Assembly (NCBI GenBank): GCA_002269645.1
Contig: NIVC01000029.1
Span: 930,001-994,000, forward strand
Direction: 5' to 3'
Length of the DNA: 64,000 bases
Source of the DNA: Macrostomum lignano
Taxonomy: Eukaryota
Shown piece after piece: positions 32,401-64,000 of the stretch. Position numbers and translations under genes: made by a program. How positions within the stretch are numbered: position 1 is the first letter of the stretch; each line of letters starts with the position of its first letter. The notes under the pieces were generated by a model. That model made no database searches. It was not told where the DNA came from and worked only from the letters and a program-made list of their open reading frames with translations.

Positions 32401-35400
32401 TGACAACGCGTCGCCGGCCACCGTGTCCCGTAACGGCATGGTGTACATGTCCAGCTCCGGGCTCAACTGGAACCCCCTGCTCAGCGGCTGGCTGCTCAAA
32501 CGTCCAGCATTTGAGCGTGACCACTTGTTCCCATTGTTTGAAGACTCGTTTCCGGACATCCTGCTATTCGCCACACAGTTCCTAACGTTTAAGATGAGCG
32601 TCCTGGAAGCATTCATTGTTCGCCAGTGCTGCGACCTGCTCGAAGGTCTGATTCCCCGGCGGGAAGAGAAAGAGGGCGCGATGAAGCCCGAGTTTTATCG
32701 CAGGCTGTACGTCTTCGTGATCATGTGGTCGATTGGCGCGCTGCTTGAGTGGGAGGACCGCAACAAGCTTGAGCAGCACATGCGCAGTCTGAAACTGGAC
32801 CTGCCTGTCTACCCTGCCGACTCCGACAACACCATGTTCGACTTTCTGGTCAGCGAGACTGGCACCTGGCAGCACTGGGAAGAGAAAGTGGAGGAGTTCA
32901 CTTATCCAACTGACAGCACCCCCGAGTACGGGTCCATCTTAGTGCCGAATGTCGACAACGTTCGCACCGAGTTTCTCATCCACACCATTCACAAGCAGGA
33001 GAAGCAGGTGCTGTTGATAGGAGAACAGGGAACAGCCAAGACAGTGATGATCAACAAGTTCCTGGCCAGATTTAATCCGGAAGAGCACATGAACAAAGCG
33101 TTGAACTTTTCAAGTGCCACCACGCCGATGATGTTCCAGCGAACCATCGAGAGCTACGTGGACAAGCGCATGGGCTCGACCTTCGGCCCGCCAGCTGGGC
33201 GCAAGATGACTGTCTTCATCGACGACATCAACATGCCGATCATCAACGAGTGGGGCGACCAAATCGCCAACGAGATAGTCCGACAGCTGATGGAGAACTC
33301 GGGCTTCTACAATCTGGAGAAGCCAGGCGACTTCACCACGCTTGTTGACATGCAGTTCATGGCGGCCATGATTCACCCTGGCGGTGGCCGTAACGACATT
33401 CCTCAGAGACTGAAGCGCCAGTTCAACATCTTCAACTGTACTCTGCCGTCGAATCCCAGCATTGACAAGATCTTCAGCGTCATCGGCTGCGGACACTATT
33501 GTCAGGAGCGCGGTTTCTCAGACGAGGTTCGAGCGCTGATCGCTCGTCTGGTGCCGCTGACTCGGCGGCTGTGGCAGCTGACTAAGATCAAGATGCTGCC
33601 AACGCCAGCCAAATTTCATTACGTGTTCAACTTGCGCGACCTGAGCCGAATCTGGCAGGGCATGATCAACACAGTCAGTGACGTAGTCAAGGACGTGGCC
33701 ACCGTGTTCAGCTTGTGGAAGCACGAATGCTGCAGAGTGATTTCTGATAGGTGAGAACGGGATTTCTGAATGAATGAGCTCAATCAATAAGCAAAAGTTT
33801 ATGGAACTAATTTCGACACTTCCAGATTTACCACCTACGACGATGTCAACTGGTTCACCCGAACGATGTCCCGAGTGGTTGTCGAGGACATGGGCGAGGA
33901 GGTTGGCAAGCTTGTGGAACCGACGCACTATTTCGTAGATTTTCTAAGGTACATTTTAGCATTAAAGAACTGTTCGATTACGTGTAGCCCAGTATTCATT
34001 GACACCTAACTAAGGCGTTCGAAGCATGAAACGCGGAGTATTGATCCCTGTATCATCACACAGACTAATACAGAGAAAATAGGACAGAGAAATTCCGCCC
34101 CGAATTCCCAAGAGAGGTCTTCTCAAGATGAGTCCGAAGGCTTTCGCTGAGTCCATTAGAGGCATTGCGGGTCGATATAAAAAAGGTCTCGACTTAAAAA
34201 GCCTTCTGGGAGTATTGTGAGTCTGCGTTTTGAACGAAGCTCTCACTATCACCAAAAGTTTAGCCCTAAGCCCACGAGCCTATTGAGTTTCACTGTGTGG
34301 CCTAATCAACGTTGAAAGGGTCATTCATCGCTGACACTTCATCAAGGCTACTTGTCCTTTTCATCTGTACACATTGACATAGCCAATGGTGCCTTAATCG
34401 ATTAACAATTTTAATGACTTTTTCTGCAGAGACGCCCCAGAAGCAACTGGTGATGAGCCAGACGATGCAGACTTCGAGATGCCTCGCGTTTACGAGCCGG
34501 TAACTTCCTGAACTCTCTTTTAGTTGCTCTGGGAATGCTATCTGTTTTTTAATAAAACATTAAAAATTCGAAAAACCGTTCCAGATTCCAACATTCGACT
34601 TCCTGGCCGAGAGGCTGCGCTACTTCATGGGCCAATACAACGAGAACATACGCGGAGCTGGCATGGATCTCGTCTTCTTTCAAGACGCCATGACTCACCT
34701 GGTGAAAATCTCGCGTATCATCAGCACACCGAGGGGTAACGCGCTGCTAGTGGGCGTCGGTGGATCCGGCAAGCAGTCGCTGACTAGACTGGCGTCCTTC
34801 ATTGCTGGCTACAACACCTTCCAAATTACGCTGACTCGCTCCTACAATGTTGTCAATCTGATGGAGGACCTGAAATTCCTTTACCGAACAGCTGGTCAGC
34901 AGGGCAAGGGAATTACTTTTGTCTTCACGGACAACGAGATAAAAGACGAGAGCTTTCTGGAGTACCTCAACAACGTGTTAGCCTCCGGTGTCGTTTCTAA
35001 TCTGTTTCCTCGCGATGAAATGGACGAAATCTGTCAGGAGTTGATCAGCGTAATGAAAAAAGAGTTTCCAAGGCGGCCGCCAACAAACGAAAACCTGCAG
35101 GAGTACTTCCTCTCGAGGACGCGACAGAATTTGCACGTAGTGCTCTGCTTCTCTCCCGTCGGTGAAAAGTTCCGCAGTCGAGCACTGAAGTTTCCGGCCC
35201 TGATTTCCGGGTGCACCATGGACTGGTTCCAGCGCTGGCCGCGGGACGCACTCGTTGCTGTGGCCGATCACTTCCTGTCTAGGTTCCCGCTGGTGTGCTC
35301 GGACACTGTGAAGCAAGATCTCATCCAAACAATGGGAGTTGTGCACGACGGAGTGGCTGAGAGCTGCGCGGAGTACTTTAATCGTTATAGGCGCAGCACT

Positions 35401-38400
35401 CACGTGACACCCAAGTCCTACCTTAGTTTCCTTCAGGGCTACAAGAAGATTTACGAAGAGAAACTTGAGTTCTTCCAGGGCCTCGCTGGTCGAATGGACA
35501 GTGGTCTGGAGAAGCTGCTTGAAGCTCAGGAGTCGGTAAAGGTACTCAGTGAAGAACTAGTAGTGAAGGAGAAGGAGCTCGAGGTAGCTAATAGGGAAGC
35601 AGAAGAGGTGTTGAAGCAGGTAGCAGTTCAGCAGCAAGCTGCTCAAGAAATCAAAAACAGAGTTCAAGTTGTTAAAGATCGAGCCCAGGCTATCGTTGAC
35701 TCTATTGCCCAGGACAAAATCATCGCCGAAGGCAAGCTTGAGGCCGCCAAACCAGCTCTTGAGGCTGCTGAAGAGGCATTGAATACCATTAAACCGGCTG
35801 ACATCGCCACAGTACGCAAGCTGGGTAAGCCGCCGCATCTCATCATGCGCATTATGGACTGCGTGTTAATCTTGTTCCAACGTCGACTGGACTTGGTGGC
35901 GCCGGACCCAGAGCGGCCTTGTGTGAAGCCAAGCTGGAGCGAGTCCTTAAAGCTCATGTCCAACACCGGCTTCCTCAGCATGCTGACGCAGTTCGCTAAA
36001 GATTCCATGAACGAGGAGAGCATCGAGTTTCTGATGCCGTACATTGACATGGAAGACTACAATTTGGAGACGGCTAAGCGGGTCTGCGGAAACGTTGCTG
36101 GTCTGCTGTCGTGGACTAAGGCTATGCAGGAGTTCTTCTGGATTAACAAAGAAGTAATGCCGTTGAAAGACAACCTGGCAAAGCAGGAGGTTCGACTTAA
36201 GAAAGCTAACGACGACCTGGCAGCTGCTCAAGCCACTCTGGATGAGAAGGAGGCCGAGCTTGCTAAAGTCCGAGCGGTCTATGAAGAGGCGATGCGCAAG
36301 AAGCAAGCTTTGGAGGACGATGCCGCAGCTTGTCGGCGCAAGATGAGCGCAGCGGAGCAGCTCATCACCGGTCTCGCTGATGAGAAGGAGCGCTGGACGC
36401 GTCAGAGCAAAGAGTACAAGTCTCAAATCGGCAGGCTCGTCGGTGACGTCCTCATGGCGACCGCTTTCCTGTCCTACTCTGGCCCATTTAATCAGGACTT
36501 TCGGCTGCTGCTGAACAGAAACTGGCAGAAGAACATGAAAGACAAAAAGATTCCATACAGTGAAAACCTCAACCTCATTGAAATGCTAGTGGAGGCTACA
36601 ACCATTGCCGAGTGGAACCTGCAGGGTTTGCCGAATGACGAATTAAGTACAGAGAACGGAATTATTGTCACTCAAGCAAGTCGCTATCCCCTGCTCATTG
36701 ATCCGCAGGGACAGGGAAAGATCTGGATTAAGAACCGAGAGGCGGTGCGAGAGCTGCAAATTACCTCACTGAACCACAAGTACTTTAGACAGCACCTAGA
36801 GGACGCTCTGTCTCTGGGCCGGCCGCTTCTAATCGAGGACATCAACGAAGAGTTGGATCCCGCACTCGATAATGTGCTTGAGAAGAACTTCATTAAACAG
36901 GGATCAACGCTTAAAGTCAAGGTTGGCGACAAAGAGGTTGATGTACTGAAAGGATTTTCGCTCTACGTGACAACTAAGCTGCCCAATCCAGCCTACACCC
37001 CGGAACTTTATGCTAGAACAAGCATAATCGACTTCACGGTGACGATGAAGGGCTTAGAGGATCAGCTGCTTGGTCGCGTGATCAAAACAGAAAAATCTGA
37101 ACTCGAAGAACAGAGAGTACAGCTAATGGAGGACGTAACGAATAACAACAAAATTATGAAAAATCTTGAAGACACTCTGCTCTTCCGACTAACCAGCACG
37201 CAAGGGTCTCTTGTTGATGACGAAGAGCTGATTGGTGTACTCAAAGAAACTAAAGTGACGTCCGCGGATGTCAAACAGAAAATTGAGACTGCCAAAGATA
37301 CTCAAATTAAGATCGCGTCAGCTCGCGAAGAGTATCGGCCCGTGGCGTCCCGAGGTTCGATTCTCTACTTCTTGATCACCGAGATGTCTATGGTTAACGT
37401 TATGTACCAGACCTCATTGAGGCAGTTCCTCGGCCTGTTCGACCTTTCGATGGAGCGTTCGTCGAAGTCTCCAATCACTACAAAGCGAATCACTAACATC
37501 ATTGACTACATGACCTTTGAGGTGTGGAAATACGCGGTACGGGGTCTGTACGAAGAGGATAAGATGACATTTACCCTGCTGCTTACTCTGAAGATCGATA
37601 TGCACGGAAAGAAGGTCAAGCACGAAGAATTCCAGACGCTGATCAAAGGTGGTGCGTCTCTCGATTTGAACGTAGTGCAGCCTAAGCCGCACAAGTGGAT
37701 TCTGGACTCCACTTGGCTCAACTTAGTCGAGCTGTCGAACTTGCATCAGTTTTCTGGCATTTTGGACCAGATCACACGAAGCGAGAAAGCCTGGAAGCAG
37801 TGGTTTGATAAGGAAGCCCCTGAAGAGGAGATCATACCAGATGGCTATAATACAAACCTGGACGCCTTCAGGCGACTTCTGCTCATTCGATCATGGTGCC
37901 CCGATCGTACTATATCGCAGGCTAAGCGGTACATCGCCGACAGTTTGGGTGAAAAGTTTGCGGAGGGAGTCATTCTAGATGTGGAAGCCGTGTGGGAGGA
38001 ATCCGAGCCGCGAACGCCGATGGTAGGCCTGCTGTCAATGGGTTCGGACCCCACTACGAGCATTGAACTGCTGGCCAAGAAGCACAAAAAGGAGTGCAAG
38101 GCCATCTCTATGGGCCAGGGACAGGAGATACATGCTAGACGGCTCATGTCTAATAGCCTGCAGAATGGAGGCTGGGTTCTACTTCAGAACTGTCATTTAT
38201 CCCTGGATTACCTCATGGAAGTGATGGATCAACTAGTTGAAGCCGAGACAGTGCACGAAGACTTTAGCTTGTGGGTCACCTGCGAGGTGCACCCCAAGTT
38301 TCCGATTTCCTTCCTCCAGCAGTCCATCAAGTTTACAAACGAGCCACCCCAGGGCGTGAAGGCGGGTCTAAAGCGAACCTTCACGAGCTTCACGCAGGAC

Positions 38401-39762
38401 TTCCTGGACATCAGCAACATGCCGCAGTGGCGCCCGATGCTCTACGGCGTTGCCTTCCTGCACACGGTAGTCCAGGAACGCAGGAAGTTCGGCCCCATCG
38501 GCTGGAACATCCCCTACGAGTTCAACACCGCCGATTTGAACGCCAGCATCCAGTTTGTGCAGAACCACCTGGACGACATGGACCTGAAGAAGGGCGTGAA
38601 CTGGAACACCGTGAGATACATGCTTAGCGAGATCCAGTATGGTGGCAGGGTGACGGATGACTACGACAAGGTCTTGCTAAACACGTTTTGCAAGGTCTGG
38701 TTCTCTGAGAAAATGTTTGAGCCAACTTTCGAGTTCTACAAGGGCTACAGCATACCGAAGTTTGCTAGGTTGAACGAATACATCGAGTACATCCAGAACC
38801 TGCCTGGCTACGACACACCGCAGGTGTTCGGTCTGCACGCCAACGCTGACATCAGCTACCAGGGCCGCACCACCAAGACCATCCTGGACTGCATCCTCAG
38901 CATCCAGCCGAAGGATTCCGGCGGAGGCTCCGGCGAGACGCGCGAGTCGGTGGTGTACAAGCAGGCCGAGGACCTGCTGGAGAAGCTGCCCGGTGACTAC
39001 GTGCCGTTCGAAGTGCGCGAAAGATTGCAAAAGATGGGCCCGCTACAACCGATGAACATCTTCCTCAGACAGGAGGTGGATCGCATGCAGCGCGTCATCT
39101 CGGCAGTGAGGACCACGCTCACCGACCTCAAACTGGCCATCGACGGCACCATCATCATGAATGAGAATCTGCGCGACGCTCTGGACTCCATGTACGACGC
39201 CAAGATACCGCAGGTGTGGAGCAAGATCTCCTGGGACTCGTCAGCCCTCGGCTTCTGGTTCACCGAGCTGATCAACCGGAACCAGCAATTCCACACCTGG
39301 GTGTTCGGCGGCCGGCCCAACTGCTTCTGGATGACCGGCTTCTTCAACCCGCAGGGCTTCCTGACCGCCATGCGCCAGGAGGTGACGCGGGCCCACAAGG
39401 GCTGGGCTCTGGACAGCGTCCTGCTGCACAACGATGTCACTAAAATGCTTCTAGCCGACGTGCACAGTCCACCGACTGAGGGCGTCTACGTCCACGGTCT
39501 GTTCCTCGAGGGCGCCGGCTGGGACCGCAGGAACAACCGCCTGACTGAGGCTCGGGCGAAGATTCTCAACGAGCAGTTACCGGTGGTGCACATCTACGCC
39601 ATCAACGGGCCTACTAAGGATGAGAAGCTGTACGTGTGCCCGATCTATAAGAAGCCGCGGCGCACGGACCTAACGTACGTGGCCGCCATCAAACTGAGGA
39701 CAAGCCAGCCAGCCGATCATTGGGTCATTCGAGGCGTGGCTCTGTTGTGCGATGTTATGTGA
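20500..39762 (+). CDS. DNAH5: Axonemal outer-arm dynein heavy chain, gamma type (DNAH5/DNAH8 family), complete, 12 exons, ~4640 aa
   Basis: Exons 20500-20604, 21164-21386, 22346-22693, 23058-23398, 24618-25286, 25366-29796, 29927-30310, 30876-31062, 31887-33750, 33826-33948, 34430-34499 and 34585-39762. All GT-AG, phases consistent, total 13923 nt = 4641 codons. P-loops: [10 protein letters not shown] (AAA1), GPSGAGKT (AAA2), GEQGTAKT (AAA3, typical of DNAH5/8), GVGGSGKQS (AAA4). The N-terminus [32 protein letters not shown] and the C-terminus [13 protein letters not shown] resemble DNAH5. The first exon is the least certain; DNAH5 versus DNAH8 cannot be resolved. Confidence 0.95.
22030..22240 (+). 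repeat. 42-bp (2x21) minisatellite in dynein intron 2, ~5 copies
   Basis: Unit tttgatgtgggtgtcatttaatttgaaaggggcgtcaactca. Confidence 0.9.
22943..23013 (-). mobile_element. tRNA-like (Glu-TTC-related) SINE head or tRNA pseudogene in dynein intron 3
   Basis: The - strand reads GGCCGCAGAGTAAGTGTGAACGTGTCCGACTTTCACGTCAAAGGCACTACTCGGTTCGATTCTGCGTGGCC: B box GGTTCGATTC, a CTTTCAC anticodon-like loop and a partial acceptor stem; the D arm is poor. Confidence 0.5.
23993..24006. promoter_or_regulatory. RFX X-box palindrome GTTGCTATAGCAAC (adjacent CCAAT) in dynein intron 4
   Basis: Perfect 14-bp palindrome fitting the X-box consensus GTNRCC(N0-3)RGYAAC / GTTGCYATRGCAAC, located inside a ciliary gene. 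Confidence 0.55.
30365..30820 (+). repeat. 22-bp C-rich minisatellite (tccaatccctacccaacctaat)n filling dynein intron 7
   Basis: Direct reading; ~18-20 variable copies. Confidence 0.95.
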
Positions 39763-41969: not shown

Positions 41970-44900
41970 TCAGACAAAGGTCATATGACCGCCGGTGCCA
42001 CTTCCACTGCCACCGGTTCCGCTGCCTCCACCGCCATTGCCGCTACCGCCGCCACTGATGTAGTCCCAATGGTTCAGCGTACGAGCTTTCGGTCGCTGTG
42101 GCAGCGGCGGCGGCGGCGGCATCGGCACAGGAGGCTGCATCAGCTGGTTGTCCTCTTGGAAGGCCTGGTCCAAGCTTCGAGGCCGGTGGGTCGTCGACAT
42201 CATCGGAGGCCGACGATGCGACATTGGCGGCGGCGGTGGTGGTGGCGGTGACGCCATCACCGGGTGCCGAGCTGGCTTCCTTGGCGGCTCCGGCTTGCGG
42301 ACTTCAGTGAATGCACTCAGCGGCGGCCCGAAATTGTTCATATCGGCCTCATCATCGTCTTCGCTGCCGCTCACGCCGCTGCGATGGCCGCCGCGTCTTC
42401 TGCCGCCGCTGCCGCCGATACCGCCGCTGCCGCACCAGTAGGAGAGGCTGCGAAAGTACTTGCCGCTCACCACTGTGGCTCCAGTGCGTCGGCCGGCGGC
42501 AGCGGCCGCGCCTACGCGAGACCGAACTTCGCGCAGCAAACGTGCTCCAAAACCGCCGCCACTGCTGCTTCGACTGCGAGCTCGGCCTCCGCTTCTGTCA
42601 GCGTAGCTGCAGTCGTTATCGAATGGGCATCGATGCTGATGCTGGCACAGCAACTGATGCTGACACTGTTGAAGAACCTGCTGATGCTGGTTCTGATTGT
42701 GATGATGATGGTGGTGATGCTGCTGTTGACAGTTTCTTGAGCCGCCGTGGAAGGTGACGGATCGACGCGGCTGTGTCGGTGAAGTCACGGACGATACGGC
42801 GTTGGCCGCGGCGGCCGCGGCTGCTGCGGCTGCGGCAGTAGCAGCAGCCATGGCGGCTTCGCGATAACAGCTTGATGAGGCGAAAGTGCAAGAGGCCTGC
42901 GAAGACAACGTAGCTGAAGTTGGTGGCGGCGGCGGCGGCTGATGCTGCAGGTGGGACAGCATCTGCGGTGACTGCTCTCCCGGACTCAACGAAGCTCTTA
43001 AGTCGCATTCCACGGAGCGGCTGCGTTTGAATGTGAGAGCTTCTAGCGGCATGTCTCTCCGTTCTGCATTACAGTGCAGCTGCTGCTGCTGCTGTTCACT
43101 GTAGTGATGAACGCCGGGTAGTTGCAGGCAGCAGCAGCCGTGACAGTGAAGCCAAGCTAAAGGAGTTTGCGTTGATTTGTTGCTGTAGCTGTTGCTGTTC
43201 GGCCTGAATTAGAATTGGCGGGCATCGGTAATGGGTGGTGAAGATATTTTGACACAACTTGAAATGTGTAGAGTATGATTTAGAGGCTCCAGTGAGGTAG
43301 GTTTTTCTTAAAGGCAGGGGCTCAGGGGCCCGTACTATAGAATCAGCAGTTAGGAGTTAGGAGCTAGGACTCAAGAGTACTCTTGACAAGGAGTGATTGA
43401 ATTTTGTGCGCTATAGATTTCAGGAGTTAAGAGTTAGGAGCTAGGAGTTCTTGCAAGGAGTGCAGCCTAGGAGTGGGGGTGTGTTCAAGGAGTGTTGCGC
43501 AATCGTTTAAGGATGATAGAGAATTGTGTGCTATATCACAATCCTAACTTTACGCTCCTTAAGGATTGAATCTCAGGAGTGAAAATGCAAATTGCTCAAA
43601 AAATATCATTTGTTTATCATTGACTCCTTCCTCATCAGAATCCGATTCGCTGTCCGAAAACATTAGAATCCTAGCTTGTCTAAGAGTGAAAATTGGCCCT
43701 TGAACTCTTGCTTAGGAGTTAAGAGTTAGGAGCGAAATTTTCTCATTCTATAGGACACGCGTTCCTAGAATCACTCCTAAAAGCCAACTCCTAGCTCCTA
43801 GACTTCCTCTCCTAATTCTATAGCATGCAGCGGACCTTAATGAGTTCTCCTAAATTCACCCAGGAGTCTCCTAACGTCCTTAAGGAGCCTCCTAGCTCTT
43901 AAAGTTTACTCTTGATTCTATAGCACAGAAAAGCCAGCTTAGGAGCTAGGAGTTAGGACACTCTTAAGGATTTAGGAGTTAAGAGTATTCTATAGCACGG
44001 GCCCCTGTGGACCCTGGCGCATTTAAAGTGACATTGTCACACAACCGGCGAGAGGCATTGCTCCCCTGAGCAGGCACACTCTCACACAAGAGTGTACTTT
44101 ATTTATCGTTAGGCATGTACATTTCACTGTGCCCTGAGGGTTGGCTCTCAGGACCGTTAATTGCGCAAGCAGAGCCAAGCAGAGATTCCAATTTAGCCCT
44201 AAATTTATGTTGACTGCACTTGGAGTCGAGCCTGGGCCGCTGGCACATAGGACCACTAAGCTACGGCCCCGTCCAGTGGAATGCATAAGAACGTAAATAT
44301 TGAGTGTGGGCCGGCTATTTACTTATTATAAATAGTAGATGCAATCTCAGACACACCATGCACAATATTCCCATGAAGTGCCCTACTATATGAGCAACCC
44401 GAAAAGTTAATTGTGCGCCGTCGCTAAGCATCAATAGGAAGCAACTGCATTGACTCGCATGTTCTGCCGATAAAAATCTTGCGCACGGGTACTAGCAGCT
44501 TTGCAATTTTTATTTTGGCGCTGGGAGGTTCCGGTAGGGGCAGCAGATCGGGAAGACGCTAACACTGCCTGCACCAAATTTTATTGTGCTGCGGTACGAG
44601 AGGACTGATATGAAACTCATGCGGCTCCGCATACCTGCGCATGCCATTGTCCGAGAAGCTGCCAGCAGTTGCCGCAGCTCCAGCCGCACCCTCCCTAATC
44701 TGCCTCTGCCGACGACTGCTGCCTCGATTGAATTGACGACGTCGCGAGACCGGCGCAACTGGGGCCGCCGGCCACTCGAGCTCGAGCTTGACGCCGCCGT
44801 CTGGCTCGGCTCGAACTCGCCACCTCAGCCGGTGCCTACGACGGGTAGACATCGAGCGCAAGAGGCGCAGCAGCAGCGACGGCAGTCCGAGCGACTGAAG

Positions 44901-48859: not shown

Positions 48860-49230
48860 TTTATTTGGCGCCAGATAGCTAAGTTTAGCGCCAAATAAAA
48901 ACAAGATGCTTGTGCTCAGTTTGGCGCCAAATAAAAACAAGATGCTTGTGCTCAGTTTGGAGCCAAGTAAAACAAAACTTTGGTGCCCAGTTTGGTGCCA
49001 AATAAAATCAAGGCGCTTGCGCTTTGTTTGGTGCCAAATAAAATCAAGGCGCTTGCGCTCAGTTTGGTGCCAAATAAAATCAAGGCGCTTGCGCCCAGTT
49101 TGGCGTCAAACATAGAAAGGCGCTTGTGTTCAGTTTGGCGCTAAGCATAGAAAGGCGCTCGTGTTCAGTTTGGCGCTAAGCATAGAAAGGCGCTCGTGTT
49201 CAGTTTGGCGCTAAATAAAATCACGGCACT
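48860..49230 (+). repeat. 36-bp minisatellite (gctcagtttggcgccaaataaaaacaagatgcttgt)n, ~10 diverging copies
   Basis: Period 36 (48915, 48951); contains the palindrome TTTGGCGCCAAA at 48920-48931. Confidence 0.9.
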
Positions 49231-50054
49231 TGTAGTGGCACACAAAAAGACGTCACTGTAAACAGTTTTTCATTTTGGTGCCGCACAATAAAGACGTTAT
49301 AAATACAGTTTCATTTTAAGGCACAATGTTCCATAGCGTAAGTCTACACAAAGCAAGGGAACAGGCAAAAGGCATAGCATCATGGCTCGTAGCTCTTTTG
49401 CATATTGCAAACTATTTGAGCTACTGCAAGCTAGGGCAGCAAAGTCAGACAAGTTCAAACACTACGGACGACAAGAGCTACTCAATGCTATAAGTTTGAG
49501 TGACTCTTAGTTACTAGCAAATAGACGTTCTTTTCACGAAGCCAGTCTATGCAGACTTGAAAATAGCTATTGTAAATATACGAGGTAGCTTAGGCAAGAT
49601 CTCAGAGCAAAAACTCATTTTCTTACTTCCAGCTAGTCTTTAAAAGACTCGGTCGACTTGAGCCGAGTTCTCAAATAACAAAAGCAGCAAACGACAGATG
49701 ACGACATCAAAGTTGTGGGAGAGAACCAGATGTATTCATTTATATATTTTTCACCTGAATAGAAACAACATTAATTGAAACAAAACAAACCAAAACAGTA
49801 CATGAGCCGTACCATATATATCAATTCAAAAGTTTGCTCTTTACCATACAAATTACATTTAATAACTTCCGAAACATGAGCGTGGTGCGGTAGTAGAAAA
49901 AAATTGAACAAAATATTTTAAATGACAGACTCCAAATAGCCTTCATTATGCATTTGGATTTCCATTTAAGAAACAGACAATGAAGTGCACGCAAAGAAAT
50001 TAATTTTTGGGAACCCTAACGATCCGCAAACACATGCTTAAACTCTAGCATTAA

Positions 50055-50540
50055 GATCTGGGAGGAAGTACACAATCTGGGACTCTGGGATTGGGATCTG
50101 GAAGGAAGTACACAATCTGGGACTCTAGAATTGGGATCTGGAAGGAAGTACACAATTTGGGACTCTAGAATTGGGATCTGGAAGGAAGTACACAATTTGG
50201 GACTCTAGAATTGGGATCTGGAAGGAAGTACACAATTTGGGACTCTGGGATTGGGATCTGGGAGGAAGTACACAATCTGGGACTCTAGAATTGGGATCTG
50301 GGAGGAAAACACACAATCTGGGACTCTGGGATTGGGATCTGGGAGAAAAACACACAATCTGGGACTCTGGGATTGGGATCTGGAAGGAAGTACACAATCT
50401 GGGACTCTGGGATTGGGATCTGGAAGGAAGTATACAATCTGGGACTCTGGGATTGGGATCTGGAAGGAAAACACACAATCTGGGATTCTAGGATTGGGAT
50501 CTGGAGGTACACAAATCTGGGACTCTGGGACTGGGATCTA
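50055..50540 (+). repeat. 40-bp minisatellite just downstream of the EMC2 stop, ~12 copies
   Basis: Unit gatctggaaggaagtacacaatctgggactctgggattgg; period 40 (50055, 50095). Confidence 0.95.
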
Positions 50541-50692: not shown

Positions 50693-53600
50693 TCACAACA
50701 TTGGCGGATTGGACGCAGGCTGCTGTTGGCCTTGACTAGGCGAACTAGCATCGCCAGCAGCGGCTGTTGGAGAGCAGCACAGACTCAATTGCAAAGCCAG
50801 CGTAGCTACATCACTGCCAGCAGCGTCACTACTATTACTACTGTTAGTAGTAGTAAATTTAGCAGCTTTCGATCCAGCAGCTCGATACCGCTCGGCAACC
50901 TGAGCAGCCGCCCATTGTGCCAGTCTGGCACTCTCTCTGCGCGAGGCAGAAGTGGAAGATTTATTGGTGGAACTGGCGCAATTACCGGCAGCCAACAGCA
51001 ATCCGAACAGGGCTCGCATGTTGTTTGGATTCAGTCGAACAGCTTGAGCGAAATAGCTTTTAGCTAACTCCATCGATTCTGTAGTGCCTTCGGTGTATTT
51101 GATTTCGGCGTAGCGCTGATGGTACAGATGGTGATGAGGATTGCTCAGGATCAGCTCTTCCATGCAGAAGGCGGCCTTTTTGTAGTCGCATTCGTTCAGG
51201 TAGAGCTCGGATAGCTCCAGCCAGGCTTCGAAATCCGTGCAGAAATCCTGTAGAGGATAGATAGAGGTAGATAGATTGGTAGATTCAGATAGAAGATGGA
51301 TGGGTAGGTTCTAATGGTAGATAGATTGGTAGATTTGGATTGGTTAGATTCTGATGGTAGATAGATTGGTAAATTTGACTAGTAGATAGATAGATTGGTA
51401 GATTCTGATGGTAGATAGATTGGTAAATTTGACTAGTAGATAGATTGGTAGATTCTGATGGTAGATTTAGAAAAGATGTAGTAGCAGATTCAGATGGTAG
51501 ATAGATTGGTAGATTCTCCTGGTAGATTTAGAAAAGATGTAGTAGCAGATTCAGATGGTAGATAGATTGGTAAATTTGACTAGTAGATAGATTGGTAGAT
51601 TCTGATGGTAGATAGATTGGTAGATTCTCCTGGTAGATTTAGAAAAGATGTAGTAGCAGATTCAGATGGTAGATAGATTTGTAGATTCGGATGATAGATA
51701 GACTGGTAGTTGGCAGAAGCGAGCAAAAAATGAGTACATAGTGACCAAATTAAAGATAGAATTTCACCTTCAAATAGCCCGTAAGCTCTTTAATAGCTTC
51801 AACAGATCGACCCCTAGCTTTAAGCACGGCAACCAATCGTTTGCGAGACAGCGAATCTAATTTGTCAGTCTCGGACATTTTCTTGTAGATCTCGGTGGCG
51901 GCATCTAGATTGTCTTCGGCTTCCAGCCGCATGGCTTCGTAACGTCGGATGCGTTGGCTATTGGGGAACTGGCGGGAGAGCTGGACTAGACAGGCGTCAG
52001 CGGCTTCTAAACGGCCGCAGTCGAGGGCTGAGATGAACACCTGCTCGTATAGAGCCCACTCTGCGATTTGGGGGGATGAGTTGGCTGTTTCTCATCTAGA
52101 TGTGACTGTTTCTCATCTAGATTTGGCTGTTTCTCATCTAGATCTGGCTGTTTCTCATCTAGATCTGGCTGTTTCTCATCTAGATCTGGCTGTTTCTTAT
52201 CTAGATCTGGCTGTATCTCGTCTAGATCTGGCTGTTTCTCATCTAGATCTGGCTGTTTCTTATCTAGATCTGGCTGTTTCTTATCTAGATCTGGCTGTTT
52301 CTTATCTAGATCTGGCTGTTTCTCATCTAGATCTGGCTGTTTCTCATCTAGATCTGGCTGTTTCTCATCTAGATCTGGCTGTATCTCGTCTAGATCTGGC
52401 TGTTTCTCATCTAGATCTGGCTGTTTCTTATCTAGATCTGGCTGTTTCTTATCTAGATCTGGCTGTTTCTCATCTAGATTTGACTGTTTTTCATCTAGAC
52501 CTGGCTGTTTCTCATCTAGATTTGACTGTTTTTCATCTAGACCTGGCTGTTTCTTATCTAGATTTGACAGTTTTTCATCTAGATTTGACTGTTTCTCATC
52601 TAGATTTGACTGTTTCTCATCAACATTTGGCAGTTTCTGTCAGCAAGATATCATGCAATACAAATTGAAGAGCCAAAGCCTTCGAACTCACTCTCATCGC
52701 CAAGCCGATTGGTGTAACGGGAAACGCAGTCGCACCACAAGTCAACAACGCGTTCCGAGTCGCGAACGCCTTCTTCGCGGATGCGTTTCAATTCTGCGCA
52801 GGCTTCTAGATATTAAATTGTGAAAAATAGGTGGGTATTGAAAGATATATATATTGAAGAATTAACTGAAATTGTCATCATTTTAATGAAACATTTTATA
52901 TTTCCAATATTTGCTTATTTTTTAGGAAAATGAGGTCCTATTTGTTAGAGTTCTTGTGATGCCAATCAGCACTGAGACTCTTACTTTGGCATCAATTTTT
53001 ACATGCTCACTATAAAATGAGCACAATAAATGCTTCTGAACAATGTTTAAAGTATGACATTAAGATTACCTACTAGGTCTAAACAACAAAGTTTTGGAAC
53101 TTTTTAAAAACAACATAAAAACCTTAGTTCATTGCTTAAAGAATGTCAAAAAGTCATTACTTTCAATAGTTACACATAGTCTATCATAATTTATAGCTCA
53201 AACTAGCTAGACCAGCCAAAGTTGGTTAGCAATTGCATATTTATGGTCAACAGTGTATTATTATTCCCAAGTCAACTTTTGCATTATCATTATAATTGTA
53301 AATCCATAAGGTCTTTTATAACAAAATTGTATCATTCTTTTATATCTGTAGAATTTTATGAAGATAGCCAACTATATGATAATACTTTTGATTTGCATGA
53401 CCTTTATTGTATATTTAATTAAAGGTCTTCTAAGATAAATTATTTGTAGCTTTATTGTGGGAAAGGGTCTATTAGATAGGCCAAGGGAGGTCTGATAAAC
53501 TAAAAGGGTATAATAATAAATAGACTAAGGGGTCTACTAGATACACTATAAAAAGTAAAAAAATTCCTGTCACAATGGTATTGAGAATAGCATATGCCTT

Positions 53601-57593: not shown

Positions 57594-60441
57594 TTCCTCC
57601 AGCAATAAATATAGAGCTGTTAAGTCTCTCAAATTTTTATTAGAAAAATTCTAAGCTAAGTGGCAGGCAGGGCAAAGCCTATTTTATTTATTAAATATAA
57701 TAGGCACAGATCACAATGTACTTGTAAATTTTATTTATGTTAGCAATAGCAATTAGTACAATTAACAATTTAGGTAAGCGATAAAATCGATGACAGTTTT
57801 AGAACTTGAATGCTACTAAAGTTGTCAAGGGTTCGACTTGTGTCTTAATGAACTGGACAGTACCCTGTGAAAGTGAGGTCGCAAAATGCTAGGTGAAAGT
57901 TACCTAGAAGCTATCAATTATGCCTACAGTGTACACCACCCAGAATTATTAGAGTCATGCGTGCGTGCGTACAAGAAACTAAAAGATGCTTCAAATGCCC
58001 GTTAAATATCGGGTGTTTAAAACTAAAAGATGTTAAATAAATTTTGCTCTTGTTTTTTAAAGATAGGAAACAAAGGAATTATAGTTTCATATAAAAATTA
58101 AATCAAAATTTCGGCTAGTATTTATAAAGTGATAAAAGACGAGCGCATTTAAATGATTCTTTTTATTACCGGGGTCCTCGACCTCATTTCTTTTTACTGA
58201 TAAATTCACCAAAAGGCCATTAGACACAATTTCACATGAACACTTAATGAAGGAATCACAAACCCCAATTGGCTGTTATTAATCTTATCTAAGATAAAAT
58301 GCATAAATATTGTGCCTGGGGTCTAAATTAAGATTTGCCTAGATTGGCTTTGGCACAATCATCAAATATTTGAAATGCACCTTAAAAGTACGGGTTTTTG
58401 CACTTTCACAACGTTTTTATATTTTAATCTTTTTGCTCGTCGTAAATCACGTCGTAAATCATACAAGGTGTACACTATTAAAGTAAAGAATAAACATTTC
58501 ATATACACAGTGCATATGTATGACTCTGCAGTAGCACGTGACTGTCTTTGGAAATCGATGGGTAAAACGTGTGCTGCATGCCACAACAAATTTCATCGTA
58601 CATGTACACGCAAATTTAAGCAGTAAAATATTTTTACATAAAGTTTATATTCTAATGAACGTGTGACCAAGAGTAATGCTTTTATTTGTCAAAGTAGAAC
58701 ATTAAAACTAAAAGTAGTATAAATTATGCATTAGTCAAGCGAAGGGCGAAAGGCGCTGAGTTATCGATAGCAACGTACATGATTAGAGGTGCAGGATTGG
58801 GGGTGCGTGTGAGTGTACAATAAAATACTTAAGCACATCACTGACAAATGAACATTTATATAAGCACATGTAGTAAAAAAGATAATAAAAACAATGAAAT
58901 TTTCCACAAAGTCCACCGTCACAGTTCTTACAGCTCCTTAATTACTGTATCAGGCAGTCAGAGAAAACCGTATAAACTGACGGGATCTCCAAGTACTCAG
59001 GCTGAAATAATTATGTCACTCGAAATATCTCGCCTTCAATAGCTCTTAAGACAAATGAGAAGTTTAAGACTTGGATTTGCGCCAGAAACCCAGAAACCAA
59101 TATAAACAGAGCAGGTTACTAGATCCGAAACTGAGCAGTGCCTGTGGGTATCTATTTTATACACATTGGCATTTTTACCCACCCCCCGCCGGTGGGATGT
59201 CTTCGCGTGGTTAGCAACGGCGGGGGTTTAAGCAATAGAAAATCTGGGACTCAGTCCTCTAGTGGTGTACACGAATTTAGTTAGTTCCAGTAGGTTGTTA
59301 AGTGTGTGGGTTAGAGATCATTCAGGGTTTTGTAAGTCTGTGTTGCGTTGGATAAAATTTGGGATAGAGAGATTACAGAAAAAGAGCTTAGTTTTCATTT
59401 CTCGTAACCCTGTCCATGGTTGATTAACTTGATATTACCGTCTGCTCTCTCCCTCGGTTGTCAAGCTTCTTGGGGTTGATATCGCCTCCAGGTTGAATAG
59501 GATTCCGTGCAGTGGGCGGGCCGTCTGATTCTCCTTAAGTGTTCGCCAGATTCTGCCGCGTGCCAAGGGCTGATCGTTTTTTTGACTTCGTTGGATAAGT
59601 CGGGCCTCTCCTCGCTTCGCTTCTCCCGGCCGGTTTGAGCGCCACATTTGAGAAACACCTGCGGCAGGGTGTTGCTATACTTACTGGAATGGAAAGAAGC
59701 TTTATTAGATTCGGTCATTCATATCTGACTTGACAGTTGATTAATTGTCTTAATGCTGCTTCTGTTTGCCCTTCTAATGGCTATCTGGGGGTTCCATTGT
59801 GCTTTTCTGCCTCCCTTCACTGCGCCTGGGCAATTCATAATTTTCAAAACTTCAGATTTATAACTCTTATATTCAAAGCATTTTTAAATCTGTGGCGGAT
59901 CATAGAAATTGTCACATTAATATCCATATTACAAAAAAACTTTATTTTTCTGTTGAAAGCTGAAATTAAATTAACGCATGTGCAAAGTATTTATTTAGAA
60001 TGCAAGTACTGTACACGTTTATTATTCATACACTGTAAAGCTGTAGATACAAACTCGATAATGGGTTAAACAGACTGACAAAGTTTGCACCAGTTCTACG
60101 AGTAATATTTATCATATTATTATTAGTAACAAATGAATATTCTCAGCTTCCAACGCAACTAATTAAGGAGTTTAATAATGCCTTGAACTGAGTTTTAACG
60201 TTAAGATACCGAGGCAACAAGCGACTAAAATAATTGAAAGTAAACTTTGTTAACTATACGTTAGTTGATCTTGTCGTTATAAATCTGTCGATTGCTATAG
60301 AGATTTATAGACAAATTTAGTAAAGCTTGAGGCTGAATTCAGACCAGCGGTTGTTGAGATAAATAAAGGCAAAATTGACTTAGCTGCTATAAATTTCAAT
60401 GGAATTTCAGTAATTACAGAGTCAGTTCCATTGAGCGATAC

Positions 60442-63071
60442 ATGTTGATCATGGTGATAATAATTTCGTTCATTATCATTTTTCTAGCATCAACCAGAGG
60501 TGAATCAGCTCAGATCGGTGAATGTGAGTTCTATACTGCATTGTTTCAGTAGTAATGTTATTTTATACCGCACAACAGGGAGGCAACAAATTGGCTGATT
60601 CTCCGGCCAAGATGTAGGAAGCTCCAGCTCCCGGGTCCTGATTCCTGACCCCCCCCCCGGGTCCCGAATCTCCAGCAAGGTCATTACTGACGCTCTCCAG
60701 GCGTTACTAGGCGTCTCCCGAGTGCCATCCCTCCAGACGACATCGCAGAAGTGTCCTTCTGAATCTTAACAGAAAGGACTTCATCTTGACCTTCACGGGC
60801 ACTGCTTTCTTAGTGAATTCAGCATTTTTGCGGCCCAGACAATAAAAAAAGTTCTTAAACTAGCTTATTAAATGCAACAATATCTTTCAGCTTTCTACAT
60901 CATATCCGTTAAATTAGCATCTTCATTTTGTTTTACCGGCTTCATATACTGACTCCATACTAGAAATTGTTTAAAATAAATGAATTTTATTACTGAAGAT
61001 TGCAGGAAAATTTGAAAAACCAAATTCCAGTTCGTGTGCATATAGCGAGTGCAAGAGAGAAAAAGGGTGCCTCAGCCCCATAGCTAGGCTGTTAAATTTA
61101 AGTGACATTGCACAAACAAGCTACTGAATAAAGAGTAGACGCTCTGCCTTTTCAAAACTTTATTTAGTCACAAGCTTGGCAAGATAGGCGGAGAAACCTT
61201 ACTATCTGCACAAAATTTCTCGATAATTTCCGATTAGCAAAACCGATCTTGACATCTCCGGTGTGCCAGCCCAAGCGAAAAGCAAGCTCAATTTCGGCGA
61301 CTCCCGCCTTGATTAAAAACAGTTCCTCAAACACTTTTTAGGCAGCCTTCGCATCACCAGATCGTCTATTGCTGACTCTTGGCAATCATCCAGCTACTAC
61401 TCCAGCCAGCTGGGATCGGCGTGCTTCAAATTGGGCAATCAACATGAAGATAAGCTGCCCTTTCTGTATTTCCACACACTTGAGAACAAGTCGCTTGCTG
61501 ATCAAGGATACTTATGGTTTGCCATCAAGCTATATAAGACAGAATTAATCAATTCGGTTACAATAGAAGGTAGAGGTATGTCTAAAGACTCTGTCTAAAA
61601 GAATCACAAAATAATTTATGCAAATAGCATAGTAGCACTCTTCAAAGCTCGCTTGCTAACGTTAAAAATTGCAGCTAAAAATCGAACAGATTCGTGGAAT
61701 TCAAGAATGGAAGAAGCCATCAAAAGTCGAGCAGCAAACATCGAAATTTGGACAAGTGAATCTAATTTTCATTTCGGCAATGACCGCTGCAACACAAGCA
61801 ATATTAGTTGGATATTTGATCGGACACGAGCTGCCGGCTACGACTGGAACCTCTGTGGGATTACAAAGCCAACTGTGTCGCTTGGCGAGATGCTAACAGT
61901 TTATTGCAGACAGCGGAGTGTAAGATCATTTTAACAATTCACAAATGACAACTTAAAAGATGAATACCTGCCAATTAACAACCAGTGCATAATTCATATT
62001 CTCAAGGTAAAAACAATGCTACTTAGAAAGTGCAGAAGAGGTCGAGTTGCAAAGACAATGCATGAGCTTCAGTAGCCTATGGCTCAATCGTGTGGATGTC
62101 ACTGGTAAGTCTTCCTGTTATAAATGAAGTTTTTTCGCAATTCTCATTGCATCACGGTCAATTTCAGAAGCCCCTGCTAGACTAAAAATCTCAACCGACG
62201 CTGAAGAATGTCAAGAAAAATATGGTAATTTTTCGAAATTCACTTTCGAATCGCCGAGTTTAGCGTCGAGAACGAAGCACAGTTGTAAACTTTGGAATCG
62301 ATTTGGCAACAGAATCTCACTGATGCAGAAGCTTGGCGAGTCTGTATGCGATGCTCGAGCAAATTCAATCAAGTCGATTTGGAGCTGTCAGAACTGCGGC
62401 AACCCTGCAAAGCTGACAGTGAACTGTTCTGTCGTATGGAATAACCAGACAATAGCATCTACATCCTTCCAACAGCCTCTGTGTCGGACATGGATGCCTA
62501 AGTTTAGTGAGTGTCGTTTTTAGGTTTTCAACAGCACTCTGCATTAAATGAGATCAAAGAAACAAGTTTTGATTGTTGTTTCACAAATCCGATGCTTCAC
62601 AAACCAGACGATCCACAAATCCGATGCTTCACAAATACGATGCTTCACAAATCCAATGCTTCACAAATCCAATGCTTCACAAATCCGATGATTCACAAAT
62701 CCGATGCTTCACAAATACGACGATTCACAAACCAGATGCTTTACACAATTTTTCAGCAATTTTAATGCTCTTCAAGGCCCTGGCTCTTCCACTCTTTATA
62801 CTTTTGGCAGCAACAATGTTTTTAGTTACAGGAGCGTTTATTAAGAAGGTAAGTTGTTAAAGGCCTATTTGTATTAATATACCTGTGTGTTAAACACCTT
62901 TTGTCAGCATTTTTTACAAATTTCAAAACTGCATTTCAGCGATATTGCAAACCAAGCCAAGATCAGTCCAGCTTATGGGTTGCCGCAGAGCTGGCTGACA
63001 GCAGTACACCGGAGGTGAGCCAGCTCAGACCTCCTGTGAAGGTTGAAACTTCGGCCGAGCCCATCGCTGTG
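60442..63071 (+). CDS. Putative type-I transmembrane protein with F-type-lectin/discoidin-like domain and Cys-rich ectodomain; 3' end uncertain
   Basis: Exons 60442-60523, 61342-61575, 61675-61917, 62027-62104, 62168-62506, 62757-62848 and 62940-63071; phases 1,1,1,1,1,0; 1200 nt with no stops. Encodes a signal peptide MLIMVIIISFIIIFLASTRG, then YFHT..LWFAIKL..INSVTIEGRAKNRTDSWNSR..NLCG..GEMLTVYC..LWLNRVDVTG, a Cys-rich segment, the hydrophobic stretch ILMLFKALALPLFILLAATMFLVTGAFI followed by KKR, and a short tail. The donor at 61918 is weak (gtgtaa). Reading through the 63072 donor gives a stop at 63078-63080. Confidence 0.6.
62580..62745 (+). repeat. 16-bp minisatellite (cacaaatccgatgctt)n, ~10 copies, in an intron of the lectin-like gene
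   Basis: Direct reading. Confidence 0.9.
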
Positions 63072-63507
63072 GTAAGATAGTTCGCTGCTTTAAAGATAAA
63101 TTTTTACTTTTTTTCGCCATTTTCAGTACATTCTGTCCTTTTAGGCATCTGCTACAATTAGAAAAAATAATTGTCAACTTGTTAATCTGGAGCTTATGAA
63201 GGGAGTTGAAGCCTGAAGTTGAAATCTCTTCTGGCTCGTATAAAAACAAAATCGAAAATCAACTCTAATATGTTTTATGTGCTATATATATTTTTTGTTT
63301 AAAATTGTATTTTTATTACTTTAAACGGGCTAAATTCAATTAATTATTACTCTGCTCTTAAAGGCTATCCATTTTTTATCTTATTTGATATTGTATGATG
63401 CTTTTATTTTCAATAAAATGGTTCTTAAAGTCATTCGGCGTATTACATATTCAGATCATATTTTCACTGACTGTTGAATTGATAGAAAAGCCAATAGCGA
63501 AAGACGG

Positions 63508-64000
<493 letters not shown>

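What the first reader, a model, noticed from the sequence alone, without database searches (positions are those of the whole stretch)
60442..63080. Hidden 7-exon gene for a membrane receptor with an F-type (fucose-binding) lectin-like ectodomain
Seen: a chain of phase-compatible small exons, mostly too short for the ORF track, gives signal peptide - lectin-like domain - Cys-rich region - TM helix - KKR - short tail. The domain contains FHT...LWFAIKL...INSVTI...NRTDSWNSR, i.e. H...R-x-D-x4-R, followed by NLCG..G..LTVYC..LWLNRVDVTG. Known: F-type lectins carry HX(26)RXDX(4)R/K as the fucose-binding motif. Here the H-to-R spacing is 36 and the usual CC after RxD is replaced by SW. The Cys-rich part has kringle-like fragments (SRTKHSCKLW, QPLCRTW). 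Inference: an undescribed, divergent F-lectin receptor architecture, a candidate for glycan-based recognition in immunity, gametes or adhesion.
Basis: partly seen in the sequence, partly recalled or inferred. Interest (0 to 1): 0.7.

Follow-up and report, generated by a model that had tools for sequence, protein, structure and literature searches.

The report
Orphan membrane glycoprotein, weakly F-lectin-like
The seven-exon gene is very probably real and encodes a single-pass cell-surface glycoprotein with no detectable relatives. Only a roughly 60-residue core of its outer domain resembles fucose-binding F-type lectins, too weakly to call it a family member.

Summary
The chain of seven phase-compatible GT-AG exons at 60442-63080 (+) is there as described. 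It gives a 402-aa protein: signal peptide, a roughly 190-aa domain, a seven-Cys region, a TM helix, KKR and a 46-aa tail.

It looks like a gene:
- All four GTRAGT hexamers on this strand are its donors.
- Short introns have 30-35% GC against 44.7% for the exons.
- A crude gene-finder score exceeds all 150 shuffles.
- All seven N-glycosylation sequons lie in the ectodomain.

Junction 3 is the weak point: it needs a poor GTGTAA donor, and a stronger GTAAGA donor 2 nt downstream is out of frame.

No homologue turned up in any database. A control shows that this animal's close relatives are not in those databases, so that absence says little.

The F-lectin idea is only partly supported:
- Pfam finds nothing in the natural sequence.
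- Residues 84-146 (LWFAIKL...NRTDSWNSR...ANIEIW...NDRC) match F-lectin profiles better than 3000-5000 shuffles.
- The exon 2 and exon 3 ORFs rank 1 and 2 of 1478 window ORFs.
- The N- and C-terminal flanks carry no signal.
- The Ca2+ motif and the vicinal Cys-Cys are absent, and the His-Arg spacing is 36.

The kringle likeness is unsupported. The fold could not be tested.

The parts
60388..60394 (+). TATAAAT, candidate TATA box 48 nt upstream of the ATG
   Evidence: Pattern only, not tested.
60407..60426 (+). Two TCAGT initiator-like pentamers (60407-60411 and 60422-60426), 19 and 34 nt downstream of the TATA start
   Evidence: Pattern only. The in-frame upstream stop at 60376 makes 60442 the first usable ATG.
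60442..60523 (+). Exon 1: ATG and signal peptide MLIMVIIISFIIIFLASTRG|ES. Donor GTGAGT, phase 1.
   Evidence: donor score 6.0; hydropathy.
60524..61341 (+). Intron 1 (818 nt, GC 42%)
61342..61575 (+). Exon 2: N-terminal part of the ectodomain (WQSS, KLGN, FHT, LWFAIKL, INSVTI). Donor GTATGT, phase 1.
   Evidence: Its ORF ranks 1 or 3 of 1478 window ORFs against F-lectin HMMs.
61509..61796 (+). F-lectin-like core, residues 84-146, interrupted by intron 2 (61576-61674). This is the only part with a statistically detectable resemblance to F-type lectin domains.
61675..61917 (+). Exon 3: NRTDSWNSR, ANIEIW, NDRC, NLCG, LTVYC. Weak donor A|GTGTAA, phase 1.
   Evidence: Its ORF ranks 2 or 5 of 1478 against F-lectin HMMs.
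62027..62104 (+). Exon 4: ...EEVELQRQCMSFSSLWLNRVDVT. An alternative acceptor at 62036 is in the same phase. Donor GTAAGT, phase 1.
   Evidence: This is the least certain exon.
62168..62506 (+). Exon 5: Cys-rich region (7 Cys, 3 N-glycosylation sequons), one self-contained exon bounded by phase-1 introns. No recognisable family.
62580..62745 (+). 16-bp minisatellite (TTCACAAATCCGATGC, 10.4 copies) inside intron 5
62757..62848 (+). Exon 6: transmembrane helix ALALPLFILLAATMFLVTGAFI followed by KK. Donor GTAAGT, phase 0.
62940..63080 (+). Exon 7: cytoplasmic tail RYCKPSQ...EPIAVVR and TAG stop. An in-frame GTG|GTAAGA just before the stop could give a slightly different C-terminus.
63412..63417 (+). 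AATAAA, candidate polyadenylation signal 332 nt after the stop
   Evidence: Pattern only.

Best explanation
A real, lineage-restricted gene of an invertebrate animal. It encodes a 402-aa type I membrane glycoprotein.

Proposed layout, from the outside in:
- After signal-peptide cleavage (about G20|E21), the membrane-distal domain (exons 2-4, about 190 aa) is a strongly diverged relative of the F-type lectin / galactose-binding-domain-like jelly roll.
- It keeps Arg109-x-Asp111-x4-Arg116 and a candidate His72, the basic triad that in eel agglutinin holds the axial 4-OH of fucose.
- It has lost the Ca2+-site Asp, and the vicinal Cys-Cys that packs on the sugar ring is replaced by Ser-Trp. It carries about 10 extra residues between His and Arg.
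- A one-exon, seven-Cys stalk of unknown fold follows, then a single TM helix.
- The tail is 46 aa with no recognisable catalytic or signalling domain. A juxtamembrane Cys is a possible palmitoylation site.

It most likely acts as a non-catalytic surface recognition or adhesion molecule that binds a glycan or another ligand through the distal domain. Fucose specificity is possible but should not be assumed.

Shown: the exon chain, the splice signals, the membrane topology features, and the core similarity to F-lectin profiles. Inferred: splicing as modelled, the jelly-roll fold, ligand binding, and function.
For: Gene:
- Canonical GT-AG at all six introns, and 4 of 4 GTRAGT hexamers used as donors.
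- Gene-finder score above all shuffles and all background windows.
- Exon/intron GC contrast.
- Protein-like composition only in the model frame.
- Signal peptide, one TM segment, and all sequons and Cys on the extracellular side.
- Five successive phase-1 introns, so that the distal domain (exons 2-4) and the Cys-rich exon 5 are each 1-1 modules.

F-lectin-like core:
- HMM of four solved F-lectin domains: 12.7 bits, E 0.02 among 5001 sequences. It beats all 5000 shuffles.
- HMM of 113 domains: 11.3 bits, with 1 of 5000 shuffles higher.
- hhalign: P 0.0019 over 33 columns, and score 25.7 over 87 columns with 1 of 400 shuffles higher.
- Profile Smith-Waterman with BLAST-like gap costs: 31-32 bits against 13.5 +/- 2.1 (max 25.6) in 3000 shuffles.
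- Blind scan of all 1478 ORFs of the window: the exon 2 and exon 3 ORFs rank 1 and 2 (3 and 5 with the larger profile). They hit consecutive profile segments in the right order.
- hmmalign pairs W86/F87 with W60/W61, R109 with R79, D111 with D81, R116 with R86, and C144 with C108 of eel agglutinin.
- With the two insertions (GRAK, EEAIKSRA) deleted by hand, Pfam's top two families out of 24,736 are PF22633 (E 8.9e-5) and PF00754 (E 1.4e-3).

Precedent: F-lectin domains in transmembrane proteins (furrowed, CG9095), and members with altered triads (PMC5712786).
Against: - The natural sequence gets no Pfam hit for any lectin family. An unrelated family (DLH, E 0.05-0.27) scores as well as anything.
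- The edited-sequence hit is still below Pfam's gathering score (23.5 against 27.8 bits), and I designed the edit with the F-lectin alignment in mind.
- Taken alone, the N-flank (P about 0.03-0.27) and the C-flank (P about 0.12-0.5) do not differ from shuffles. The pairings of His72, LGN, the second Cys and LWLNRVDVT are therefore not established, and three aligners give three different C-terminal alignments.
- At Pfam-wide multiplicity, a per-family P of about 1e-5 is E of about 0.3.
- Shuffles are a lenient null.
- Intron positions are not shared with a Nematostella or an eel F-lectin gene, although those two also differ from each other.
- No homologue, no transcript and no structure model.
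- Junction 3 relies on a weak donor.
- CDS GC3 is 46%, against 70% in the dynein gene of the same window.
Confidence: 0.5

Rival explanations
1. The gene is real, but the ectodomain is a fold unrelated to F-type lectins. On this reading, the 60-residue resemblance (hydrophobic strand, NRxDxxxxR, a second strand) is chance or convergence, and the protein is a true orphan surface glycoprotein.
For: - No Pfam hit in the natural sequence.
- The flanks carry no signal.
- The Ca2+ motif, the Cys-Cys and the canonical spacing are absent.
- The domain is about 190 aa, against about 140 aa for the family.
- There is no homologue to build a profile from.
Against: - The core similarity beats 3000-5000 shuffles with two independent profiles.
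- Two adjacent exon ORFs are the top hits of a blind six-frame scan, in collinear order.
- The context is extracellular, as expected for this family.
Confidence: 0.27
2. It is not a functional gene: either a decaying pseudogene or a chance set of ORFs with splice-like signals. On this reading, the modelled protein is never made.
For: - It is absent from all protein collections searched.
- Junction 3 has a weak, out-competed donor.
- GC3 is unlike that of the neighbouring gene.
- The locus sits in an AT-rich, repeat-rich, otherwise gene-poor stretch.
Against: - The databases also lack this species' EMC2 (best identity 57-60%), so absence is expected.
- 4 of 4 consensus donors are used.
- Exon/intron GC contrast.
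- Protein-like composition only in frame.
- The topology is coherent: signal peptide, TM, positive-inside rule, sequons and Cys only outside.
- There is no stop or frameshift in 402 codons.
Confidence: 0.12
3. The main product is a secreted, truncated protein. The strong donor GTAAGA at 61920 is joined to the strong acceptor at 62007. This reads ...CRQRS-VKTMLLRKCRRGRVAKTMHELQ* and drops the Cys-rich region and the TM helix.
For: Donor 61920 scores 3.4 against -1.0 for 61918. Acceptor 62007 scores 4.3 against 0.9 for 62027. The frames are compatible.
Against: - It leaves exons 5-7, with their three consensus GTRAGT donors, TTTCAG acceptors, long ORFs and TM helix, unexplained.
- Its total score is lower than that of the full chain.
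Confidence: 0.08

Closest known systems
F-type lectin domain (fucolectins: eel agglutinin AAA, PDB 1K12; striped bass FBP32, PDB 3CQO; Pfam PF22633 F5_F8_type_C_2)
   Same: - A central segment with a hydrophobic W-containing strand (LWFAIKL against PWWRVDL) and a V-x-I strand.
- N-R-x-D-x4-R identical in pattern.
- The following A-x-I-x-I strand.
- An N-x-x-C that aligns with Cys108.
- An extracellular location.
- A candidate His upstream.
   Different: - It is below every family threshold.
- 36 rather than 24-26 residues separate His and Arg.
- Two insertions flank the NR motif.
- The Ca2+ motif h2DGx is replaced by KLGN.
- The vicinal Cys82-Cys83 is replaced by Ser-Trp.
- The domain is about 50 residues longer.
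- The N- and C-terminal thirds cannot be aligned with confidence.
Drosophila furrowed and CG9095 (transmembrane proteins with an F-lectin domain, a C-type lectin domain and CCP repeats; PMC5712786)
   Same: A type I membrane protein that presents an F-lectin-type domain at the distal end. CG9095 also departs from the canonical basic triad.
   Different: There is no C-type lectin domain and no CCP repeats here. Instead there is a single unclassifiable seven-Cys exon. The protein is much smaller, and no sequence similarity was demonstrated.
Discoidin / F5/8 type C domain receptors (Pfam PF00754, same galactose-binding-domain-like clan)
   Same: The edited core also hits PF00754 (19.2 bits), as expected for the shared jelly-roll superfamily. 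It is a membrane-distal binding domain on a single-pass receptor.
   Different: It is below threshold (28.2 bits). There is no kinase or other cytoplasmic domain. The natural sequence gives no hit.
Kringle domain (PF00051)
   Same: Only a few short strings with Cys and Trp (SCKLW, NCGNP, LCRTW).
   Different: There is no profile match at E <= 10, no six-Cys kringle spacing and no NYCRNPD motif. There are 7 Cys in 112 residues with a different spacing.

Membership tests
F-type lectin domain (PF22633 / FTP) | Significant match to the family profile (Pfam gathering score 27.8 bits) | tested here: not met
   No hit for the full protein, the domain or the core at E <= 10. It reaches 23.5 bits (E 8.9e-5) only after two insertions were cut out by hand. 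My own F-lectin HMMs give 11-13 bits.
F-type lectin domain (PF22633 / FTP) | Fucose-binding motif H-X24(26)-R-X-D-X4-(R/K) (PMC5712786) | tested here: not met
   R109-T-D111-SWNS-R116 fits exactly. His72 exists, but 36 residues lie between His and Arg. The pairing of His72 with His52 rests on a flank alignment that is not significant.
F-type lectin domain (PF22633 / FTP) | Ca2+-binding motif h2DGx | tested here: not met
   The best-aligned segment is F-K-L-G-N (56-60), with Leu in place of Asp. The alignment is of low confidence.
F-type lectin domain (PF22633 / FTP) | Disulfides Cys50-Cys146, Cys82-Cys83 and Cys108-Cys124 of eel agglutinin | tested here: inconclusive
   Cys82-Cys83 are replaced by Ser112-Trp113, and Cys108 pairs with Cys144 (confident core). 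The partner Cys124 could be Cys166 or Cys183, depending on the aligner. Cys50 and Cys146 appear to be absent, but they lie in unalignable flanks.
F-type lectin domain (PF22633 / FTP) | F-type beta-jelly-roll fold | not testable with these tools
   Structure prediction refuses spliced sequences, and no single exon covers the domain.
F-type lectin domain (PF22633 / FTP) | Binding of L-fucose or fucosylated glycans | not testable with these tools
   This needs recombinant ectodomain and a glycan array.
F5/8 type C discoidin domain (PF00754) | Match to the family profile (gathering score 28.2 bits) | tested here: not met
   No hit in the natural sequence. It scores 19.2 bits after the hand edit.
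Kringle (PF00051) | Profile match and the six-Cys kringle pattern | tested here: not met
   Exon 5 gives only noise in Pfam (CpXC, DUF7129, E about 0.09). There is nothing in the PDB. The 1.84e9 representatives give only repeat-protein noise. The AlphaFold2 model has pLDDT 37.
Type I single-pass membrane glycoprotein (topological class) | N-terminal signal peptide, one TM helix, positive-inside rule, and glycosylation sites and Cys on the extracellular side | tested here: met
   Kyte-Doolittle windows above 1.6 occur only at 1-23 and 322-356. KKR follows the helix. All 7 sequons and 13 of 14 Cys lie between them. No dedicated predictor (SignalP, TMHMM) was available.

The most novel reading that the evidence does not exclude
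A lineage-specific surface receptor whose distal domain is an F-lectin jelly roll remodelled beyond profile detection. The Ca2+ site is lost, Cys-Cys has become Ser-Trp, and the loops are lengthened, yet the Arg-Asp-Arg sugar clamp is retained. It is fused to a previously unseen seven-Cys stalk fold. This would be a new sub-type of F-lectin with altered ligand specificity, in an animal lineage that is hardly sampled.
Probability: 0.35. Interest if true: 0.45.

Novelty: new variant of a known kind. Interest (0 to 1): 0.33.

Why it matters
If confirmed, it would add a very divergent, membrane-anchored branch to the F-type lectin family. It would also show which parts of the fucose-binding site survive extreme divergence: the R-x-D-x4-R clamp would persist without the Ca2+ site and the vicinal disulfide. 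That is of interest to people who work on lectin evolution and invertebrate recognition molecules.

It also shows that short-exon genes in AT-rich, repeat-rich stretches of poorly sampled animal genomes can be missed by ORF-based scans.

It does not touch a long-standing open question. At present it remains an orphan gene with a suggestive motif.

Tried and rejected
- **Spliced protein in the structure and library tools.** I did not try to get round this.
- **Homologue search with the full protein.** The search for homologous proteins found nothing at E <= 0.01.
- **Exon 5 against 1.84e9 representatives.** It gave three hits at E about 1e-4. All are multi-stretch matches to repeat proteins (bacterial Ig-like repeats, WD40), so they are noise.
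- **Metagenome scan with six peptide patterns.** Nothing was confirmed.
- **PDB phmmer.** The only hit is YukC at E 0.22, which is noise.
- **AlphaFold2 of exon 5 alone.** The pLDDT is 37, so no fold search was made.
- **Global hhalign with the large F-lectin profile.** The result was degenerate (8 columns) and was not used.
- **Shared intron positions as independent evidence of homology.**
  - The Nematostella F-lectin gene has a phase-1 intron after the AEIRVG strand.
  - The eel gene has a phase-0 intron before Cys108.
  - Ours has phase-1 introns before NRTD and after TVYCRQR.
  - None is shared, so the test is uninformative.
- **Paired loss of Cys50/Cys146 and a D64K/R131E charge swap.** I considered using these as covariation evidence. 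I rejected them as unsafe, because the flank alignments are not significant and differ between aligners.
- **Rfam and tRNA scans of the window.** Nothing was found.
- **Alternative junction 3.** No other donor/acceptor pair links exon 3 to the exon 4 and exon 5 frames.
Full report
**What is in the sequence.** The window is animal nuclear DNA.
- It carries an axonemal dynein heavy chain with very large exons (Pfam DHC_N1/N2, AAA_6/8/9, MT and Dynein_C).
- It also carries an EMC2 homologue and an Ig-domain exon, and many minisatellites.
- The finding lies in the AT-rich last 4 kb (GC about 40%).

Joining them gives seven exons:
- 60442-60523
- 61342-61575
- 61675-61917
- 62027-62104
- 62168-62506
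- 62757-62848
- 62940-63080

All introns are GT-AG, with phases 1,1,1,1,1,0. The CDS is 1209 nt, giving 402 aa. The His72-to-Arg109 gap is 36 residues, and Ser-Trp stands where F-lectins have Cys-Cys. The only slip is '...VDVTG': the Gly codon is split by intron 4, so the spliced product reads '...VDVTE'.

**Is it more than chance?** Several independent measures say yes.
- On the + strand of 60400-63100 there are exactly four GT[AG]AGT hexamers, and all four are donors of the model. The - strand has none.
- Four of the six acceptors are TTYYAG.
- The five short introns have 30-35% GC, against 44.7% for the exons.
- I wrote a deliberately crude gene finder: a stop-free bonus, generic splice-site matrices and an intron penalty. 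Its best score is 37.3 on the + strand. That compares with 14.4 +/- 5.1 (max 31.5) for 150 Markov shuffles, 9-18 for four neighbouring intergenic windows on both strands, and 9.3 for the - strand of the locus.
- The amino-acid composition of the model frame is protein-like: +29.5 bits against -1.7 +/- 9.8 for 2000 stop-free random ORFs of the same base composition. The other five frames are negative.
- The product has exactly two hydrophobic segments, an N-terminal signal peptide with T-R-G|E and residues 322-356 followed by KKR. All seven N-X-S/T sequons and 13 of 14 Cys lie between them.
- A TATAAAT with two TCAGT pentamers lies just upstream of the ATG. An in-frame stop lies at 60376, and AATAAA lies 332 nt after the stop codon. 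These are patterns only.

**Weak points of the model.**
- The crude finder's own optimum is a different chain that skips exon 3.
- Junction 3 is poor. It needs donor A|GTGTAA at 61918 (score -1.0). The better GTAAGA at 61920 (score 3.4) is out of phase with every usable acceptor for exons 4 and 5.
- With the strong acceptor at 62007, that better donor would give a truncated secreted product.
- GC3 is 46%, against 70% in the dynein gene.
- No transcript data could be consulted.

**Relatives.** None were found.
- The full protein finds nothing in the 5.8-billion-cluster collection.
- Exon 5 finds only repeat-protein noise among 1.84 billion representatives.
- A metagenome scan confirms nothing.
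- The PDB gives only noise.

This absence carries little weight. As a control, the EMC2 exon of the same window finds no protein more than 57-60% identical; the best matches are a millipede and a clam. Neither this species nor any close relative is in the collection.

**The F-type lectin claim, tested directly.** Pfam gives no family at E <= 10 for the whole protein. It also gives no lectin family for the isolated domain or core, where an unrelated hydrolase family at E 0.05-0.27 is the only 'hit'. By the family's own criterion it is therefore not a member.

- one from the solved domains (3CQO N and C, 1K12, 2J1R);
- one from 113 domains of 120 fucolectins.

Results:
- The 4-sequence HMM gives 12.7 bits, above all 5000 shuffles.
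- The 113-sequence HMM gives 11.3 bits, with one shuffle higher.
- hhalign gives P 0.0019, and 25.7 over 87 columns with 1 of 400 shuffles higher.
- A profile Smith-Waterman with BLAST-like gap costs (6/0.5 bits) gives 31-32 bits against 13.5 +/- 2.1 (max 25.6) in 3000 shuffles. That is roughly P 1e-5 by an extreme-value fit.
- A blind scan of all 1478 stop-to-stop ORFs of the window ranks the exon 2 and exon 3 ORFs 1 and 2 (3 and 5 with the larger profile). They hit consecutive profile segments in order.
- hmmalign pairs W86/F87, R109, D111, R116 and C144 with W60/W61, R79, D81, R86 and C108 of eel agglutinin.
- When I cut out two insertions (GRAK before NRTD, EEAIKSRA after it), Pfam's two best families are PF22633 (23.5 bits, E 8.9e-5) and PF00754 (19.2 bits). 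Both are still under their gathering scores, and I designed the edit with the alignment in view.

**What limits the claim.** I split the domain into three parts. All the signal is in the core, residues 84-146. The N-flank should hold QSS, the h2DGx Ca2+ motif and C-x-H-T. The C-flank should hold the F-x-C, GRYV and LxLCEVEV strands. Neither flank can be told apart from shuffles: P is about 0.03-0.27 for the N-flank and 0.12-0.5 for the C-flank.

Three aligners also give three different C-terminal alignments. It follows that:
- The attractive pairings of His72 with His52, and of LWLNRVDVT with LTLCEVEV, are leads and not results.
- The same holds for the apparent paired loss of Cys50 and Cys146.
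- The same holds for a possible D64K/R131E charge swap.

Of the family's defining features as summarised by Vasta et al. (PMC5712786):
- R-x-D-x4-R is met.
- The His spacing is not met.
- The Ca2+ motif is not met (KLGN).
- The vicinal disulfide is not met (SW).

Corrected for about 25,000 Pfam families, P 1e-5 is E of about 0.3, and shuffles are a lenient null. Intron positions are not shared with a Nematostella or an eel F-lectin gene, but those two also differ from each other, so this says nothing.

**The Cys-rich region.**
- It is a single exon bounded by phase-1 introns.
- It has no Pfam match beyond noise, no PDB match and no relative among the representatives.
- AlphaFold2 on the single sequence gives pLDDT 37.
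- 'Kringle-like' is therefore not supported.

**Most likely explanation (about 0.5).** It is a real, lineage-restricted gene for a non-catalytic type I surface glycoprotein. Its membrane-distal domain descends from the F-lectin / galactose-binding-domain-like jelly roll but has diverged beyond profile thresholds. It retains the Arg-Asp-Arg clamp and has lost the Ca2+ site and the Cys-Cys. A function in glycan or other ligand recognition is inferred, and fucose specificity is open.

Rivals:
- a real gene with an unrelated fold (about 0.27);
- a pseudogene or chance ORF chain (about 0.12);
- a truncated secreted main isoform (about 0.08).

**Comparison and novelty.** Membrane-anchored proteins with F-lectin domains are known (furrowed, CG9095). 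Members with altered binding triads are also known (PMC5712786). So the general idea is not new.

The new elements would be:
- the degree of divergence;
- the small single-domain architecture;
- the unclassifiable stalk.

I rate it a new variant of a known kind, of modest interest, pending transcript and structure evidence.

Noticed in passing
window 24630-39762 (+): An axonemal dynein heavy chain gene with unusually large exons: ORFs of 1494, 687 and 1711 aa. Pfam finds DHC_N1/N2, DYH2-5-8_CC, AAA_6/8/9, MT, AAA_lid_11 and Dynein_C. Its GC3 is about 70%, far above that of the candidate gene.
   Followed up: partly
window 50693-52040 (-): An EMC2 (TTC35) homologue with at least two exons and an Ala/Ser/Gln-rich C-terminal extension. 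Its best database identity is only 57-60% (millipede, clam), so the source species has no close relative in the protein collections.
   Followed up: partly
window 647-1633 (-): A long ORF with an immunoglobulin domain (Ig_3/I-set, E 1e-16), probably an exon of a cell-adhesion gene that runs off the window.
   Followed up: partly
window 41970-43052 (-): A 360-aa ATG-initiated ORF rich in poly-Ala, poly-His/Gln, Gly and Pro, in a 54% GC block. It has no Pfam family. It may be a low-complexity nuclear protein or an exon of one.
   Followed up: no
window 2696-5700, 10869-11511, 12762-13316, 48878-49233, 50042-50539, 51269-51709, 52082-52638: A striking density of minisatellites (periods of 16-162 bp), several of which create long spurious ORFs on both strands. 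The 16-bp array in intron 5 of the candidate gene (62580-62745) is 65-70% similar to the arrays at 3.9-5.7 kb.
   Followed up: partly
window 63510-64000: A (GACA)n microsatellite of about 123 copies. It runs to the end of the window, starting 430 nt after the stop codon of the candidate gene.
   Followed up: no
window 61918-62075: Tandem donors GT-GT-AAGA at the end of exon 3, and a strong acceptor at 62007 that is itself followed by GTAAAA. This allows an alternative short terminal exon and a secreted truncated isoform.
   Followed up: partly
L001 13173-14367 and L002 4135-4888: Intron positions inside F-lectin domains differ between a cnidarian gene (phase 1, after the AEIRVG strand, in both of its domains) and an eel gene (phase 0, just before Cys108).
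   Followed up: partly
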